IMG/VR virus record: IMGVR_UViG_3300032053_000002
Coordinates: 1-64,000 of that record
Length of the DNA: 64,000 nucleotides
Strand: one strand, 5' to 3'
Position numbers and translations under genes: made by a program
Part shown: positions 36,119-58,107 of the stretch, piece after piece
Numbering within the stretch: position 1 is the first letter of the stretch
Layout: the number at the start of each line of letters is the position of its first letter
The notes under the pieces: model-generated
Told to the model about the DNA's origin: nothing
The model's database searches: none
Seen by the model: the letters and a program-made list of their open reading frames with translations, nothing else

Positions 36119-36140
36119 TCAATTCTCCCAATACAATTAG

Positions 36141-36489
36141 TGGAGTCGGCGGGGAATCGAACCCCGCGTCCGAAATAGTTCCAAAATCAACATCTACAAT
36201 TATAGTTTGTTTTTATTTTATATCGCGAAAACAAACAAAACATGATAACAACTTTCTTTTAATTCTATGTTGTGAAAGAATGGAGGCCTGACCGAATGGT
36301 CATTCCGGCTACCAGTTGATATGACACCGCTTTTCCCACTATCAACGTCATGGAGCGATGGCGACTTAAATAGTTTTAAGCCGCGTAGGCAAGTGAATAG
36401 TTGCCATTTATTTTTGTTTTTGGTTTTTAACGTCACCCCGACGAATTGCAGTTAATCTTCTACCTACCCCGTCGAATCCGTGCGACCCC
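36141..36489 (-). ncRNA. ssrA: tmRNA; tag (A)GNYSLAYAA at 36405-36376
   Basis: 5' GGGGUCGCACGGAUUCGAC; 3' GCGGGGUUCGAUUCCCCGCCGACUCCA; G3.U alanine pair; 349 nt; tag ORF ends AA-stop after AUAAAU. Confidence 0.95.
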
Positions 36490-51322: not shown

Positions 51323-51649
51323 CTATTCTTTCGGTTTAATAGATTTTAAAACACGGTCAATATCGTCGCTCACTTCTTTTTTAAGTCGTTTCAGAGTTTT
51401 ATTTACAATTTTGACATACATTAAATAAAAGATGTTGGAAAAAAACAAAATGAATATAAATATAAAAATCACGACAAGTGATGGCGAAAAAAATGCAAAA
51501 TACAAAAATAATAATAAAGAAATAAGTATTGATAAAACTTCATTGATATTAAAAATAATATCCAGACGTTTCTCCCATTTTTCTATTAGGTTGTTATTCA
51601 ACCGTATTTTGTCGTTTAATAAATTCATATTTTTTAATATCTTCTTCAA
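51323..51649 (-). CDS. Membrane protein
   Basis: Two TM segments. Confidence 0.45.
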   Translation of the reverse strand: MKKILKNMNLLNDKIRLNNNLIEKWEKRLDIIFNINEVLSILISLLLFLYFAFFSPSLVVIFIFIFILFFSNIFYLMYVKIVNKTLKRLKKEVSDDIDRVLKSIKPKE

Positions 51650-52406
51650 ACCACACTTTTAATTCATAACCACGTCGCTTCACGGCATCCCATTTCAGTT
51701 TATCATTTTCTCTTTCATAACCTTTTGTCTCGATATAATAAAAATTTTCATCGTTATCAAGAACTTTAAAATCTAAAAGATAAAAATGCTCTTTTCCATC
51801 AACTCCAATATATTTTATTCGATCATTTGTATATTCCCAATCTTTTATATCTCCGTCCCGTTTCCACCTATCAAGTATTTTACAAGTTCTTAGTTCATAC
51901 GTTCCTTGTACTTTTATTTTTCCATGCGTTGTTTCTACTTCCACCCATCTAGTTATTCCGCCAAAAACCGGTTTTCCATTTTCATACGATTTTTTTACCG
52001 CAAGAGATAAATTTTTTCTCGTTTCATTGCTCACAAAATGTCCCATTAAGGCTTCGCGTATTTTTACTAATGTTTCTTCAGAATAAACATTCGTTCTTCC
52101 CCTATTCCACGGAACTTGCCCTCTATGATTATCACTTATTTTTTTTAATCTTTCGTCCGTTTCTTTAGTCAGTCCTTTATTCCACGGAATTCTACCTTTA
52201 TTCCACGAAATTCTACCCTTATTTCTTTCCATTAATGTATTACTAACTTTTTCGTTTATTTCTTGCCGCATCTCTTTCGTTGAATAACCTCGAGCGCATT
52301 TTTTTGAGCAAAATGTTCCATCCGAATATTTACTATACTTTACAACTTCATTTATATTACAATATTTACATTTCATTTTATTTGTAATTTCCCACTTATT
52401 TTGCAC
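51594..52406 (-). CDS. Putative homing endonuclease (NUMOD-type repeats + TnsA-like PD-(D/E)XK)
   Basis: CKYC..FCSKKC; WNKG repeats; YE...Y.LDF...YIETKG; probable start 52376. Confidence 0.75.
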   Translation of the reverse strand: MQNKWEITNKMKCKYCNINEVVKYSKYSDGTFCSKKCARGYSTKEMRQEINEKVSNTLMERNKGRISWNKGRIPWNKGLTKETDERLKKISDNHRGQVPWNRGRTNVYSEETLVKIREALMGHFVSNETRKNLSLAVKKSYENGKPVFGGITRWVEVETTHGKIKVQGTYELRTCKILDRWKRDGDIKDWEYTNDRIKYIGVDGKEHFYLLDFKVLDNDENFYYIETKGYERENDKLKWDAVKRRGYELKVWFEEDIKKYEFIKRQNTVE

Positions 52407-52452
52407 TCTCGGCAGGATTTGAACCCGCCCTATTCCGTTGCTCTACGAGAGC
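52404..52452 (-). ncRNA. 49-nt tRNA minihelix-like RNA (acceptor stem + T-arm only)
   Basis: GCUCUCG-UAGAGCAACGGAAUAGG-GCGGG-UUCAAAU-CCUGC-CGAGAGU-G-CAA. Confidence 0.6.
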
Positions 52453-52814
52453 ATTATTCCTTCTATAATATCATGGCTTATTTCGCGAAGATTTTCAAAC
52501 TCTCTCCAGCCTTCCCATTTCTTTTCCAATATCCGAAATTCTTCTTCGGTTTCGGCTAATGATATTTCGTGTATAAATTCGTGTAAGTTATTCTTATCAA
52601 ACAACTTATTTACATTTATCGCAGTATTTATCTTTTTTATTTTTCGCAACAAATTGTTTCCCACACTTTTTACAATCATTTATATGTCCGATAATATGAG
52701 GTTTAACATTGGGATTGCATATCGAGCACTGCATCCAATCCAATGAACCGGTATGCACGTGCCCGAAATGCGCATTTATTGAATCCTTGTTCATATTTTA
52801 TTCCTTTTAATTAG

Positions 52815-52895
52815 TATCCACGGCAGGATTTGAACCTGCGTTTTCAGCTCCGTACTACGGCTAATGCGTTCGTAGCGCATCCCGGCTACGTGGAC
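52815..52895 (-). tRNA. Non-canonical D-armless tRNA-like RNA, anticodon ACG (Arg), long variable arm
   Basis: GUCCACG/CGUGGAU acceptor; 8-nt UAGCCGGG linker; AUGCG-CUACGAA-CGCAU; 24-nt variable region; GCAGG-UUCAAAU-CCUGC; ends A-CUA. Confidence 0.75.
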
Positions 52896-52901
52896 ATATA
52901 T

Positions 52902-53123
52902 TTATTCTTTTACTTCCAACTCCGCTGCCGCTTCGGCTTTCACTTTCTTCTTCGGTTTATATTCAATTTCATTTCCACCGCTCAGTATTTCGCCGCACTT
53001 TGGGCAGGTTAGCCAAAAAAACAGTTCACCCTCTTCCTTTTTAGGAACAACCGACTTAAATTGATAATTCCTATCACAAGTCTCGCAATAAAAACCTCGT
53101 TTACTAGCCATTATATTCTCCAC
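52902..53123 (-). CDS. Small Zn-ribbon protein
   Basis: CETC...CPKCG. Confidence 0.55.
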   Translation of the reverse strand: MENIMASKRGFYCETCDRNYQFKSVVPKKEEGELFFWLTCPKCGEILSGGNEIEYKPKKKVKAEAAAELEVKE

Positions 53124-54930: not shown

Positions 54931-56919
54931 TCACGAGCGACGACTCTTATTTTTTAACCACTGAAATACCCTGTCCACGTTGATTGATTTTTCAAAAATT
55001 TCTTCTTTATGCCCGATTACAGAATAAACATATTCGTCAATTGTATTTTCGCCCAAAAGATAATAGATATTTACAGGATTTTGTTGACCTATCCTATGCA
55101 ACCTATCTTCCGCTTGTGACAATAACGCCGGTGTCCACGGTAATTCAACAAACGCAATCTTATCGCAAATTCTCTGTAATCCATCGATACCTATTCCGGC
55201 CGATTGCAGCGAACCGATGAAAATCTTTATATCTTTTTCAGCTATGAATCGGTTTATAGTGTCGCTAACTTCATTCGCCATCCCGCCATACAACATCACC
55301 GAACAATTTCTGTATTTATTAAAAAGATTTTCTATTATGTCGCGATGATGAGCGAAAATAACCAACTTATCAACTTGCTCCAAAGTATCGTCAACCCATT
55401 CGAATATCGCGTCCATTTTGTACGTCGCCGTGGCCTGTCGTAAGTATTCTATTTTAACCATTTTTTCTGCGTATTCACTGCGAGTTGTTAGTTTTTCTTC
55501 AATCAACTCTTCTACTTCAATTTCAGATAGATTTTGTTTCTTTAACTTTTCTTCATACCAGTTTATAGAGTCATCTTCTACTTCTTTATATTTTTTGTAA
55601 TCAGATAAAGGCAAATAAACTACCTGTTTTATCTTGTCTGGTAATTCCTTTAACACGTCTTTTTTCATTCGCCGAATCATACAGGATTTTCTTAGTTCGG
55701 TCTGCAACTCTTCTTCATTCGCGGAAGTGTATATCGTTCCGAAACCATTAAATTGCGGCGGTGCATATCTGCGAATAAATCGTCTTTTCCCACCGAAGTG
55801 AGAATCCAAAACACCCAACAATTCCAACTGCGGCGCCAATTCTATTGTTCTATTCAGGATAGGCGTTCCCGTTGTTAAAATGCGATATGAAACATTTTCA
55901 AAATATTTTAATATTGCTATTGTGCGCTGGGAGTTAGATGTTTTCAAATAATGCGACTCATCTGCTATCAAACACTTCGGTTTTCTTATCATAAGTCTGT
56001 CGCCAACTTTGGAAATCATATTGTAACTAACCACGTAAATATCAGAGTTCGGAAAAACGCTGCTGTTGTCTATCTTTGATGCCGTCCGATGTGGAATCCA
56101 ACTTTCTATTTCTCTCAACCAATTTCTCACAATCATGGCCGGAACAACAATTACTGCGGGGTATAATTGGTGATATTCAATAATCGCCAATGCTTGAATT
56201 GTTTTTCCGAGACCCATTTCATCCGCGATTAAAATTCCGTTCCGATGTTTAGAATATTCGACGGCGACTTTCTGAAACGGATATAATCTCTCAAACATTC
56301 CTTTGAATTCATCTGATTCGTTTATAGATTCCATAGTTGACAGTATAAATAATTTTTTTTGTTGACCTACCTCTATTTTAGCTTTATTTATCGCCTTCTC
56401 CATTTTCTTTTCGTCTATGTTATAACCGATCTCTTTAATTAGCGGATTGTTCAGCAGTTCTTCGAAAATGTTTTCATCACGTATTACAGTAAACCATAGC
56501 GGATCAGAATTCTGGCGATATTCGAATTGTAAGTCCAAATCTTCTTTGAAAAATTTAATTAACGGCTCGAACTTGTTTCGCGGAAGCCATGGTAAACGAA
56601 TCTCTAATACGTTGTTATCGCCCATAATTTTTATTTCTATCGCCTGAAAAACCGGTCGACTTTCGCCTCCGCTTTTTTCTTTTTGGTATTCTTCCAACGA
56701 ATAATATTTTATTCCCAGACTTCTGAAATAATCATTGTACTTTATCAAAGAATCGTTTAGTAATTTTATTATTTCGTAATCCTTTATTTTTCCGCGAAGT
56801 AAATGACTAAACAACATCAAATCCGGAGGAGAAATACCTGTTATTTTTCCTTTAGCGGCATAATCCAGGAGCAACTTTACGAATTTTACGATGTAGTGAT
56901 TCTCAAAATTATTTGCCAA
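54931..56919 (-). CDS. SNF2/HARP-like helicase
   Basis: LYPFQ; ADEMGLGKT; DESH; TGTP; RR.K; QAEDRLHRIGQ. Confidence 0.92.
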   Translation of the reverse strand: MANNFENHYIVKFVKLLLDYAAKGKITGISPPDLMLFSHLLRGKIKDYEIIKLLNDSLIKYNDYFRSLGIKYYSLEEYQKEKSGGESRPVFQAIEIKIMGDNNVLEIRLPWLPRNKFEPLIKFFKEDLDLQFEYRQNSDPLWFTVIRDENIFEELLNNPLIKEIGYNIDEKKMEKAINKAKIEVGQQKKLFILSTMESINESDEFKGMFERLYPFQKVAVEYSKHRNGILIADEMGLGKTIQALAIIEYHQLYPAVIVVPAMIVRNWLREIESWIPHRTASKIDNSSVFPNSDIYVVSYNMISKVGDRLMIRKPKCLIADESHYLKTSNSQRTIAILKYFENVSYRILTTGTPILNRTIELAPQLELLGVLDSHFGGKRRFIRRYAPPQFNGFGTIYTSANEEELQTELRKSCMIRRMKKDVLKELPDKIKQVVYLPLSDYKKYKEVEDDSINWYEEKLKKQNLSEIEVEELIEEKLTTRSEYAEKMVKIEYLRQATATYKMDAIFEWVDDTLEQVDKLVIFAHHRDIIENLFNKYRNCSVMLYGGMANEVSDTINRFIAEKDIKIFIGSLQSAGIGIDGLQRICDKIAFVELPWTPALLSQAEDRLHRIGQQNPVNIYYLLGENTIDEYVYSVIGHKEEIFEKSINVDRVFQWLKNKSRRS

Positions 56920-57340
56920 ATGCTTGCTCCAGTATAGGAAGATGCCTATAAAACATTTTTTTCTCGGCTTCTTCTTTGCTCAAAAACCCCGCCCAATCAA
57001 CCTCTTCTTTTTGCAACAAATCACTCACAACAACCGGATATACAAATTCCGCGATTCGCGGATTAGTTATTTCAACTATGAAACAGAAAACTTTTTTATA
57101 CACCTTTCCTTTTTTATCGGTATATTCTATAATAATTGGAACATCGGACTTTATCATACCCCTTGAAAATCGCACACCGATTTCTTCTTCCGTTTCGCGA
57201 ATAGCGGCATCTATCACATCTTCACCGTTCTCTATTTCGCCTTTAGGAATCGAGTACGTCCCATTCCAGGATGCATTAGTCGGGTGGCATAACAAAATCT
57301 TATTATCGTAAATTATCGCGAGCCCGGCAGATTTTTTCAT
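56909..57340 (-). CDS. NUDIX hydrolase
   Basis: PKGEIENGEDVIDAAIRETEEEIG. Confidence 0.92.
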   Translation of the reverse strand: MKKSAGLAIIYDNKILLCHPTNASWNGTYSIPKGEIENGEDVIDAAIRETEEEIGVRFSRGMIKSDVPIIIEYTDKKGKVYKKVFCFIVEITNPRIAEFVYPVVVSDLLQKEEVDWAGFLSKEEAEKKMFYRHLPILEQAFGK

Positions 57341-58107
57341 TCCACTAACTCTCCGTCTTTTTTATAGATTATATTTTTTAGATAGTCGCGATTGTCGGCG
57401 AAAAACGGAACGTCATTATCAAGTACCCACTTTGACCTGAGAACTTTTTGCCCATCTTCGGTAACAATCTCATACATATATTTTTTTACGGTGAATCCCC
57501 ACTTCTGAGCACTGGGTAATTCTTCCCACTTTTCACCTTTACCTTTTAATTCACACATTTCTCTTAACTCGTCAGAATTTTTATTCAGTAATACTTTTTG
57601 ACTAAACATAGAATGCGCAAGAGATTGGATAGAATTTCTCTTTGCGTCAAATTGTCGCCAGATGAAAATGTTTTCCACTTCGTTTAGCGGAACATTAAAT
57701 ACCCGACAATCAAAGTATGCCAGTGAGTTGGGAAGCGCAATCACACTGTTGAAATTGGCAGTAAAAATAGATGCGATTACAGAAGAAACCTTTTGAATAT
57801 TTCCGCCAAACCACACCTGAGACTTTTCTCCACCCCAGACTCCACCACCCATTAAAAATGTCGCTTCATCTGATTGACTATATGCCATAGCGACAGACCC
57901 AATTTCTTTACAAGTTTCAACCGCCGCGATTCCCATTGCAGTAGACAACGCCCAATCAAACGGCCGTTTGAACTCATTTTTTCCAACCCAGGTATGAAAC
58001 GCTTTACCATCCACTCGAACAAAAATCGGAAGGTTCACGTCTAAATAGATTCTACTTTTTTCTTCGTACGCTTTTAGACGGTTTCCCATCTCGTCTTTTT
58101 TCTTCAT
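57337..58107 (-). CDS. tRNA-His guanylyltransferase Thg1-like 3'-5' polymerase
   Basis: RVDGKAFH; YSQSDE; FDCR; WRQ.DA.RNS. Confidence 0.92.
   Translation of the reverse strand: MKKKDEMGNRLKAYEEKSRIYLDVNLPIFVRVDGKAFHTWVGKNEFKRPFDWALSTAMGIAAVETCKEIGSVAMAYSQSDEATFLMGGGVWGGEKSQVWFGGNIQKVSSVIASIFTANFNSVIALPNSLAYFDCRVFNVPLNEVENIFIWRQFDAKRNSIQSLAHSMFSQKVLLNKNSDELREMCELKGKGEKWEELPSAQKWGFTVKKYMYEIVTEDGQKVLRSKWVLDNDVPFFADNRDYLKNIIYKKDGELVE

What the first reader, a model, noticed from the sequence alone, without database searches (positions are those of the whole stretch)
52404..52452. 49-nt tRNA minihelix (acceptor + T-arm only) related to the D-armless RNA
Seen: it shares architecture with 52815-52895 (G1.U72, CG-UAG junction, GCRGG-UUCAAAU-CCUGC), but only 17 nt replace the D, anticodon and variable arms. 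It lies directly upstream of a homing endonuclease gene and overlaps the stop of the preceding ORF. Inference: either a top-half tRNA mimic (RNase P/Z processing signal or decoy) or the remnant of an endonuclease-targeted tRNA.
Basis: partly seen in the sequence, partly recalled or inferred. Interest (0 to 1): 0.6.

Follow-up and report, generated by a model that had tools for sequence, protein, structure and literature searches.

The report
Gutted tRNA-Arg relic beside homing endonuclease
The 49-nt "minihelix" is real, but it is most likely what is left of an unusual phage arginine tRNA gene that lost its whole anticodon half, and it travels with a selfish endonuclease gene whose relatives live inside phage tRNA arrays.

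Summary
On the minus strand, 52452->52404 forms a 7-bp acceptor stem, a 17-nt linker, a 5-bp T stem with loop UUCAAAU, and a discriminator G. Chance gives about 0.1 such hits per 293-kb genome.

The window is the start of a 292.7-kb jumbo phage from sediment. The 81-nt neighbour belongs to a widespread 80-nt phage tRNA-Arg family with a rewired D region, found in 42 IMG/VR contigs.

Two related lineages (61-62% SNF2 identity) carry a full-length tRNA-Arg(UCG) of this family at the syntenic spot. Its acceptor stem is identical to the 49-mer's, or differs by one compensated pair. So the 49-mer is an internally deleted ortholog with no anticodon. A full UCG copy survives at 83000-83079.

The gene 27 nt downstream encodes a NUMOD3 plus PD-(D/E)xK-type endonuclease. 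Nine of its ten homologues found elsewhere sit inside tRNA arrays. In three haplotypes the endonuclease gene is 100% identical, as is the 49-mer apart from one linker SNP in one haplotype, while flanking genes differ by up to 8%.

Best reading: a tRNA relic at a homing site. Whether it was the endonuclease's target, and whether the RNA is made and processed, remain untested. No RNA data exist.

The parts
52404..52452 (-). 49-nt acceptor/T-arm minihelix, an internally deleted tRNA-Arg(UCG) gene. Acceptor 5' 52446-52452; linker 52429-52445; T arm 52412-52428; acceptor 3' 52405-52411; discriminator 52404.
   Evidence: It is the positional ortholog of L095:10007-10086 and L096:9466-9546.
52815..52895 (-). 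Full-length 81-nt non-canonical tRNA-Arg(ACG), the first tRNA of the locus. It belongs to the parent family (model R1).
   Evidence: Rfam tRNA 37.4 bits; R1 85 bits; covariation in alignment A1.
51594..52376 (-). Free-standing homing-endonuclease-like gene (260 aa). It has an N-terminal Cys motif, NUMOD3 repeats and a C-terminal PD-(D/E)xK-type domain with invariant D202, E216 and K218.
   Evidence: Pfam NUMOD3 24.5 bits; phrog_945 endonuclease; alignment A3; fold matches to TnsA, Can2, Cas4-like and I-Bth0305I, all weak; homologues in tRNA arrays.
52443..52679 (-). Upstream ORF of 78 aa (73 aa from GTG at 52664). Its last three codons and its UAG stop are nt 1-10 of the minihelix. It is in the same frame as the endonuclease gene.
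   Evidence: All 4 polymorphic sites in its unique part are third codon positions. Five protein variants are on record.
52606..52794 (-). 62-aa Cys-rich ORF between the full-length tRNA and the 78-aa ORF.
52902..53123 (-). Zinc-ribbon ORF that marks the syntenic start of the tRNA pair in all lineages.
   Evidence: Homologues lie directly upstream of the first tRNA in L031/L095 and L096.
51590..52433 (-). Block that is 100% identical in three haplotypes: the endonuclease gene, the spacer and the 3' two-thirds of the minihelix.
   Evidence: Window versus L088 and L187. Flanking genes differ by 2-8%.

Best explanation
The 49-nt element is the relic of a non-canonical phage tRNA-Arg(UCG) gene that lost about 31 nt from its middle. 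The loss removed the rewired D helix, the whole anticodon arm and most of the D-loop-like segment. Only the acceptor stem, the T arm and a scrambled 17-nt linker remain.

It cannot decode. The loss is tolerated because a full-length UCG isoacceptor of the same family sits in the main tRNA array.

The relic marks, and now moves together with, the insertion site of a free-standing NUMOD3/PD-(D/E)xK homing endonuclease gene. That gene's family inserts 27-98 nt downstream of tRNA genes in phage tRNA arrays.

Shown: homology, positional orthology, the deletion, the endonuclease family's association with tRNA arrays, and the identical endonuclease-plus-relic block in diverged haplotypes.

Inferred: that the intact tRNA gene held the endonuclease's recognition site, that the deleted allele is the cleavage-immune allele, and that the transcript may still be cut by RNase P and RNase Z because the acceptor/T module survives.
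For: 1. Parent family. Forty-two IMG/VR contigs carry 80-nt elements (34 distinct sequences), and every anticodon is an Arg anticodon. The proposed structure is 95.5% paired, with 229 double-change cells against 58 in shuffles.

2. Family score. The 49-mer scores 28 bits on the family model, with 37 model positions replaced by 5 nt.

3. Synteny. The order Zn-ribbon gene, first tRNA, small ORF, second tRNA is kept in two other lineages. There the second tRNA is a full tRNA-Arg(UCG) with acceptor GCUCUCG/CGAGAGU (identical) or GCUCCCG/CGGGAGU.

4. Redundancy. The genome has four full family members (ACG, UCU, UCG, CCU), including UCG at 83000-83079.

5. Endonuclease context. Eight of 9 IMG/VR homologues and the one cultured-phage homologue lie between tRNA genes. 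The endonuclease gene is absent from this locus in the three other lineages.

6. Identical block. There are 0 differences in 859 nt (endonuclease gene, spacer, relic) against L088, where the locus average of 2.55% predicts about 22. There are 0 of 783 in the endonuclease gene against L187. Flanking genes reach 8%. The endonuclease protein is monomorphic, while neighbours have 2-6 variants.

7. Precedent. T4 SegB is a homing endonuclease inside a tRNA cluster whose 27-bp site includes the T stem-loop motif (PMC2330249).
Against: 1. All 12 base pairs and the T-loop consensus are intact, which a long-neutral pseudogene would not keep. The deletion may simply be recent, since it is seen only in strains with at least 97% identity.

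2. The 17-nt linker is not the product of one clean deletion. The family's invariant GGAGCUGAAAAY is replaced by GAGCAACGGAAUAGG.

3. A 95-nt tRNA-like RNA at 140107-140201 has a similar linker (GAGCAAGUAAUAGG). This hints at a shared motif that I cannot explain.

4. No endonuclease-free allele of this phage was found, so the target site is not defined.

5. Another partly deleted family member (L068:3131-3192) has no endonuclease gene next to it.

6. The metagenome contigs used for the haplotype comparison could be strain chimeras.

7. There are no expression data.
Confidence: 0.72

Rival explanations
1. Exapted processing module. The surviving acceptor/T-arm half is kept because RNase P and RNase Z still recognise it. 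Cutting there gives the endonuclease mRNA a defined 5' end with a 27-nt leader and uncouples it from upstream genes. This would be tRNA punctuation without a tRNA.
For: In all homologous loci the endonuclease ATG lies 27-98 nt after a tRNA or tRNA-like element on the same strand. In L079 that element is also a tRNA-like RNA without an anticodon stem. Exactly the half that RNase P, RNase Z and the CCA enzyme recognise is retained intact; that acceptor/T minihelices are substrates is established knowledge, not tested here. No convincing promoter lies between the upstream genes and the endonuclease gene.
Against: RNase P cleavage at nt 1 would remove the last three codons and the stop of the upstream 78-aa ORF, which is under purifying selection. 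The minihelix competes with a more stable local hairpin. The form is seen in one species only. There are no RNA data.
Confidence: 0.18
2. Stand-alone functional tRNA top-half mimic. It would act as a decoy or sponge for a host factor that binds acceptor/T arms, such as a defence nuclease, a toxin, EF-Tu or the CCA enzyme, or as a charged minihelix.
For: The stems and T loop are perfect. The one polymorphism seen is in the linker, not in a stem. A second RNA in the genome has a similar linker. Phage tRNA loci are known to be linked to anti-defence (PMC13096335, abstract only).
Against: It is lineage-specific, and relatives have a normal full-length gene. It lacks G3:U70 and any anticodon or A20-type Arg determinants. 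It has no encoded CCA, and the phage encodes no CCA enzyme and no ArgRS. No other such mini was found in 515 kb of related tRNA-rich loci or among the 150 listed of 285 matches in 34 related phage records.
Confidence: 0.07
3. Chance hairpins, a transcription terminator, or an integration-site tRNA fragment.
For: A terminator-like palindrome was flagged on the plus strand at 52439-52453.
Against: All genes are on the minus strand, and that strand has no U tract. Chance expectation is 0.1 per genome. The acceptor stem is identical to that of the syntenic tRNA in a relative. An attachment-site fragment would lack the 5' acceptor strand.
Confidence: 0.02

Closest known systems
tRNA pseudogenes and gene remnants in phage tRNA regions that hold free-standing homing endonucleases (T4 segB region; PMC2330249)
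   Same: An endonuclease gene lies inside or beside a tRNA cluster. It is present or absent between related phages. It is inherited together with flanking tRNA DNA. SegB's recognition site includes the T stem-loop motif.
   Different: This enzyme is a NUMOD3 plus PD-(D/E)xK-type protein, not GIY-YIG. The neighbouring tRNA is not merely absent or variant: it is precisely gutted to its top half. No cleavage data exist.
Synthetic acceptor-TΨC minihelices (own knowledge: minimal substrates for RNase P, the CCA-adding enzyme and some synthetases)
   Same: The same 12-bp coaxial acceptor/T architecture with a canonical T loop.
   Different: This one is natural and genomically encoded, and carries a 17-nt linker between nt 7 and the T stem that can fold back on the acceptor strand. 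No substrate activity was tested.
tRNA-like domain of tmRNA
   Same: An acceptor stem plus T arm without an anticodon arm.
   Different: There is no G3:U70, no mRNA-like part or tag ORF, and no Rfam tmRNA match. The phage's real tmRNA is at 36138-36489.
Arm-less mitochondrial tRNAs (nematodes; PMC7609411)
   Same: A strongly shortened tRNA-derived molecule.
   Different: Those keep the anticodon arm and lose the D and/or T arms, so they still decode. This one keeps the T arm and loses the anticodon arm.
The parent: 80-nt phage tRNA-Arg family with a rewired D region
   Same: Acceptor stem, U8-A9-G10, T arm, G1:U72 (14 of 33 family members), and position in the genome.
   Different: The 49-mer lacks the long-range helix, the anticodon arm and the invariant GGAGCUGAAAAY segment.

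Membership tests
tRNA (Rfam RF00005) | Score at or above the 29-bit gathering threshold | tested here: not met
   22.3 bits, E 0.14 on a 2-kb search. Not found by ARAGORN.
tRNA (Rfam RF00005) | 7-bp acceptor stem and 5-bp T stem with a GUUCRANYC-type loop | tested here: met
   7 of 7 pairs (one G:U) and 5 of 5 pairs (one G:U), loop UUCAAAU.
tRNA (Rfam RF00005) | Anticodon arm with a 7-nt loop, and a D arm | tested here: not met
   Only 17 nt lie between the acceptor and the T stem. The covariance model deletes these positions.
Rewired-D phage tRNA-Arg family (model R1) | Long-range helix (nt 10-14 with the segment after the anticodon arm) and an Arg anticodon NCK | tested here: not met
   37 model positions are replaced by 5 nt.
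Rewired-D phage tRNA-Arg family (model R1) | Descent: syntenic position and acceptor stem shared with full-length members | tested here: met
   L095 second tRNA has acceptor GCUCUCG/CGAGAGU. L096 second tRNA has GCUCCCG/CGGGAGU. Both have the same flanking Zn-ribbon gene and first tRNA.
Rewired-D phage tRNA-Arg family (model R1) | Invariant GGAGCUGAAAAY segment before the T stem | tested here: not met
   The linker reads GAGCAACGGAAUAGG, which is 4 nt longer and only partly alignable.
tmRNA (one- or two-piece) | G3:U70, a tag reading frame, and an Rfam tmRNA match | tested here: not met
   Pair 3:70 is U:A. There is no tmRNA hit here.
Intrinsic terminator | GC-rich hairpin followed by a U run on the transcribed strand | tested here: not met
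   The only terminator-like hit is on the non-coding plus strand.
Free-standing homing endonuclease (neighbouring gene) | Nuclease domain plus a DNA-binding module typical of homing endonucleases | tested here: met
   NUMOD3 is above the Pfam cut-off. D...ExK is invariant in 6 homologues. Foldseek's best rows are PD-(D/E)xK nucleases, all weak with E of 0.007 or more.
Free-standing homing endonuclease (neighbouring gene) | Presence/absence polymorphism between related genomes, and spread with flanking DNA | tested here: met
   Absent at this locus in the L031/L095, L096 and L092 lineages. The block is identical in diverged haplotypes.
Free-standing homing endonuclease (neighbouring gene) | Site-specific cleavage of the endonuclease-free allele | not testable with these tools
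   Needs purified protein and substrate DNA.

The most novel reading that the evidence does not exclude
The gutted tRNA is not dead. It is transcribed, trimmed by RNase P and RNase Z, and perhaps CCA-tailed into a stable RNA of about 50 nt. The endonuclease cassette carries it along as its own expression and processing signal, or as a decoy for host factors that bind tRNA top halves. That would make it a natural, mobile 'minihelix' RNA gene.
Probability: 0.2. Interest if true: 0.65.

Novelty: new member of a known kind. Interest (0 to 1): 0.42.

Why it matters
On its own the element is a tRNA gene relic, which is an ordinary kind of thing. It is useful for three reasons.

1. It gives a clean natural example of a homing endonuclease cassette bordered by a precisely truncated tRNA gene. 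That offers a direct guess at the enzyme's target, which can be tested with one protein and two DNA substrates.

2. Chasing it exposed the parent. This is an apparently undescribed, phage-centred family of 80-nt arginine tRNAs in which the D hairpin is replaced by a helix formed around the anticodon arm. This phage has no other kind of tRNA-Arg. Standard annotation missed it in cultured Brevundimonas jumbo phages.

3. It defines an uncharacterised NUMOD3/PD-(D/E)xK endonuclease family that is specific to phage tRNA arrays.

Tried and rejected
- **Pattern searches for the 49-mer.** Exact and degenerate patterns for its 3' half and its linker found nothing else in IMG/VR.
- **Other minis of this kind.** The structure scan of 515 kb of related loci found none. 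It found one 62-nt partial deletion (L068) and two likely chance hits. The R1 search of 34 related phage records listed no hit near 49 nt, but only 150 of 285 matches were shown.
- **RNA evidence.** No RNA run holds the stretch. Laying DNA contigs showed strain variants but no endonuclease-free joint.
- **Endonuclease-free allele.** All strain variants in ENA, Logan and JGI keep the order Zn-ribbon gene, full-length tRNA, ORFs, mini, endonuclease gene.
- **Relatives of the 95-nt RNA at 140 kb.** Searches by DNA, by the neighbouring gene in G001 and by IMG/VR found none.
- **Filler origin of the linker.** One other 12-mer match exists in the genome (166949-166960). It is probably chance (expected 0.035) and was not pursued.
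- **TAG recoding.** I asked whether the UAG inside the element is read through. TAG ends 32 of 213 long ORFs, and reading it as sense gains no more than the TGA control does, so code 11 stands.
- **Endonuclease identity.** PDB sequence and NCBIfam searches gave nothing. The fold model was of low confidence outside the C-terminal domain.
- **Promoter and terminator scan.** Hits were at background level.
- **Literature.** Six searches found no description of this tRNA form or of phage minihelices.

Full report
**Setting**

The window is the first 64 kb of a 292,723-bp IMG/VR virus record, estimated 91% complete. It comes from sediment metagenomes. Nearly all genes, the tmRNA (36138-36489) and 45 ARAGORN tRNAs lie on the minus strand. 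None of the ARAGORN tRNAs is a tRNA-Arg.

**The observation**

Read on the minus strand, 52452->52404 has these parts:
- a 7-bp acceptor stem, GCUCUCG with CGAGAGU, where G1 pairs with U72;
- a 17-nt linker, UAGAGCAACGGAAUAGG;
- a 5-bp T stem, GCGGG with CCUGC, and a T loop UUCAAAU;
- a discriminator G.

Rfam's tRNA model gives 22.3 bits, below its 29-bit threshold.

I ran a structure-only scan for a 7-bp acceptor stem, a 5-bp T stem and a TTCRANN loop. Over the whole genome and both strands it gave 43 hits: 40 tRNAs, this element, a 95-nt tRNA-like RNA at 140107-140201 and one A/U hairpin. Forty Markov shuffles gave 0.1 hits per genome with a linker of 30 nt or less.

So the element is real and not chance. 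One caveat applies. The linker's AGAGC can pair with the 5' acceptor strand. That alternative fold is 2 kcal/mol more stable, and the acceptor stem forms in about 47% of the ensemble.

**The neighbour is a real but non-canonical tRNA**

The element at 52815-52895 matches Rfam tRNA at 37.4 bits. Its anticodon loop CUACGAA gives anticodon ACG.

A pattern taken from its 3' part found 42 IMG/VR contigs, yielding 34 distinct sequences of about 80 nt. All carry UCU, UCG, ACG or CCU, and C35 is invariant.

These RNAs have no D hairpin. Instead:
- nt 10-11 pair with the GC of an invariant GGAGC;
- nt 12-14 pair with three nt just after the anticodon arm;
- a bulge that looks like a D loop (UAAYUGGA) is left over;
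- UGAAAAY leads into the T arm.

On alignment A1 this structure is 95.5% paired, with 229 double-change cells against 58 in shuffles. Slid controls fall to 34-47% paired. The long-range pair 13:38 shows GC 23, AU 7, CG 1, UA 1 and GU 1.

The phage has four full members: ACG at 52815, UCU at 77423, UCG at 83000 and CCU at 113018. It has no canonical tRNA-Arg, no ArgRS gene and no CCA-enzyme gene.

The family is phage-centred. There are 12 hits in 185,579 prokaryote genomes, mostly on MAG contigs. Cultured Brevundimonas jumbo phages carry a member that is left unannotated at the end of a tRNA array.

**What the 49-mer is**

With the family model R1 it scores 28 bits, E about 1e-5 genome-wide. 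The model keeps the acceptor stem, U8-A9-G10 and the T arm, and replaces 37 positions by 5 nt.

Related phages were found through the SNF2 helicase gene 2.5 kb upstream (61-63% identity). They show the ancestral state.
- In the L031/L095 lineage and in the L096-98 lineage, the order is Zn-ribbon gene, tRNA-Arg(UCU), small ORF, tRNA-Arg(UCG).
- Both tRNAs there are full-length family members.
- The second tRNA has acceptor GCUCUCG/CGAGAGU in L095, identical to the 49-mer. In L096 it has GCUCCCG/CGGGAGU, one compensated pair away.
- A third lineage, L092-94, has no tRNA there at all.

The 49-mer is therefore the positional ortholog of a tRNA-Arg(UCG) gene that lost its middle. The loss was not one clean deletion, because the surviving linker is 4 nt longer than the family's invariant segment and only partly alignable.

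The deleted form occurs only in near-identical strains. One other partial deletion of a family member was seen, the 62-nt L068:3131-3192.

**The endonuclease**

The ORF starting at ATG 52376 (260 aa) has these features:
- an N-terminal Cys motif;
- NUMOD3 repeats (Pfam 24.5 bits against a 20.4-bit cut-off);
- a conserved C-terminal domain with invariant D202, E216 and K218;
- a model whose best structural neighbours are PD-(D/E)xK nucleases: TnsA, Can2, Cas4-like and the I-Bth0305I catalytic domain. All matches are weak, and the model is confident only in this domain.

Of 9 IMG/VR homologues, 8 lie inside dense tRNA arrays, 62-98 nt downstream of a tRNA or tRNA-like element. The only homologue in cultured phages, in Acinetobacter phage AB-Navy97, also lies between tRNA genes. 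A second gene sharing the N-terminal domain abuts this phage's main tRNA array. At the studied locus the gene is absent in all three other lineages.

This matches the T4 SegB situation. SegB is a homing endonuclease inside a tRNA cluster, and its recognition site includes the T stem-loop motif (PMC2330249).

**Population signal**

Three haplotypes of this phage could be compared: the window, ENA contig L088 and JGI contig L187.
- Against L088 there are 0 differences from 51590 to 52499. That span covers the endonuclease gene, the spacer, the relic and 47 nt beyond. The locus average of 2.55% predicts about 22 differences in the 859 nt from 51594 to 52452.
- In the same comparison the Zn-ribbon gene and the 134-aa gene differ by 8%.
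- Against L187 the endonuclease gene again shows 0 of 783 differences. The only change in the relic is A19 to G in the linker.
- The endonuclease protein has a single sequence in the protein collection. Its neighbours have 2-6 variants.

This is what recent spread of the cassette into diverged backgrounds would look like. However, mosaicism is common here: the 209-aa gene is also identical against L088. Metagenome contigs can also be strain chimeras.

**Mechanism, with its status**

Shown: the element descends from a tRNA-Arg(UCG) gene, has no anticodon, is redundant, and is physically and genetically linked to a tRNA-array-specific endonuclease gene.

Inferred:
- The intact tRNA gene carried the endonuclease's recognition site. 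The gutted allele arose from faulty repair, or was selected as the immune allele, and is now copied with the cassette.
- Because the acceptor/T module is what RNase P, RNase Z and the CCA enzyme recognise, the transcript may still be processed. That would give the endonuclease mRNA a 27-nt leader.

Against efficient processing, the upstream 78-aa ORF ends inside the element, and its UAG is nt 8-10. That ORF is a real gene, since all 4 polymorphic sites in its unique part are third codon positions. RNase P cleavage would strip its stop codon.

**Limits**

No RNA data exist. No empty-site allele was found. The linker's resemblance to that of the 95-nt RNA at 140 kb is unexplained.

**Verdict**

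The 'remnant' reading is supported, and the 'mimic or processing signal' reading is open but less likely. The element itself is an ordinary kind of thing in an unusual setting. The parent tRNA family and the endonuclease family are the more novel by-products.

The operators' limits on read laying were kept (3,301 letters).

Noticed in passing
window 52815-52895 (-); also G000:77423-77502, 83000-83079, 113018-113097; alignment A1, model R1: A family of 80-nt phage tRNA-Arg has no D hairpin. Nt 10-14 pair with the strand after the anticodon arm, a D-loop-like bulge follows, and GGAGCUGAAAAY is invariant. It occurs in 42 IMG/VR contigs with Arg anticodons only and is supported by covariation. This phage has no other tRNA-Arg. 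I found no description in the paper library; one 2024 abstract (PMC11551756) says all known bacterial tRNAs are canonical cloverleaves.
   Followed up: yes
G000:79919-79995 (-), outside the window: A 77-nt tRNA-like element with anticodon loop CUGAUAC (GAU, Ile) scores 44 bits on the Arg-family model and is missed by ARAGORN. The rewired architecture may not be limited to Arg.
   Followed up: no
G000:140107-140201 (-) = L078:5108-5202: A 95-nt tRNA-like RNA lies in an intergenic spacer after an SPFH-like gene. It has an 8-bp acceptor stem, a canonical T arm and two inner hairpins. Its linker GAGCAAGUAAUAGG resembles the 49-mer's. No relatives were found.
   Followed up: partly
window 51590-52499 versus L088 and L187: The endonuclease gene shows zero divergence in three haplotypes while flanks differ by up to 8%. 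The left edge of the identical block falls within 5 nt of the endonuclease stop codon.
   Followed up: yes
window 52443-52445 and 51594-52679 (-); G000:74629-74702: The 78-aa ORF and the endonuclease ORF are in one frame, separated only by the UAG inside the relic. The phage encodes a tRNA with anticodon CUA. There is no genome-wide TAG recoding, so this is probably coincidence, but read-through would fuse the two proteins.
   Followed up: partly
window 56909-58107 (-): Thg1-like (PF04446, tRNA 3'-5' nucleotide addition) and NUDIX genes lie directly upstream of the SNF2 helicase gene. This suggests phage-encoded tRNA end repair. The Pfam hits come from the collection's precomputed table.
   Followed up: no
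L079:2570-2648 and L079:4050-4649 versus L080: A 79-nt tRNA-like element with acceptor, D-like and T arms but no anticodon stem lies 77 nt upstream of an endonuclease homologue. A GIY-YIG ORF is present in L079 and absent in the otherwise identical L080, between tRNA-Ala and tRNA-Asp.
   Followed up: partly
L047:1256-1380, L071:5308-5434, L051:5242-5353, L041:12034-12141: Elements of 108-127 nt in other phage tRNA arrays have perfect acceptor and T arms but large inserts. They may hold introns or be other non-canonical tRNAs.
   Followed up: no
G000:77422-77502; L082:391-476; L068:2799-2889: ARAGORN either misses the rewired tRNA-Arg genes, calls them 'tRNA-Asp(atc)', or calls them tRNA-Arg with shifted ends. 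Phage tRNA censuses therefore probably under-count Arg.
   Followed up: partly
G000:97406-99211 (-): A 602-aa frame is interrupted by a single TAG (longest uninterrupted piece 398 aa). It is a candidate for read-through by the CUA tRNA.
   Followed up: no
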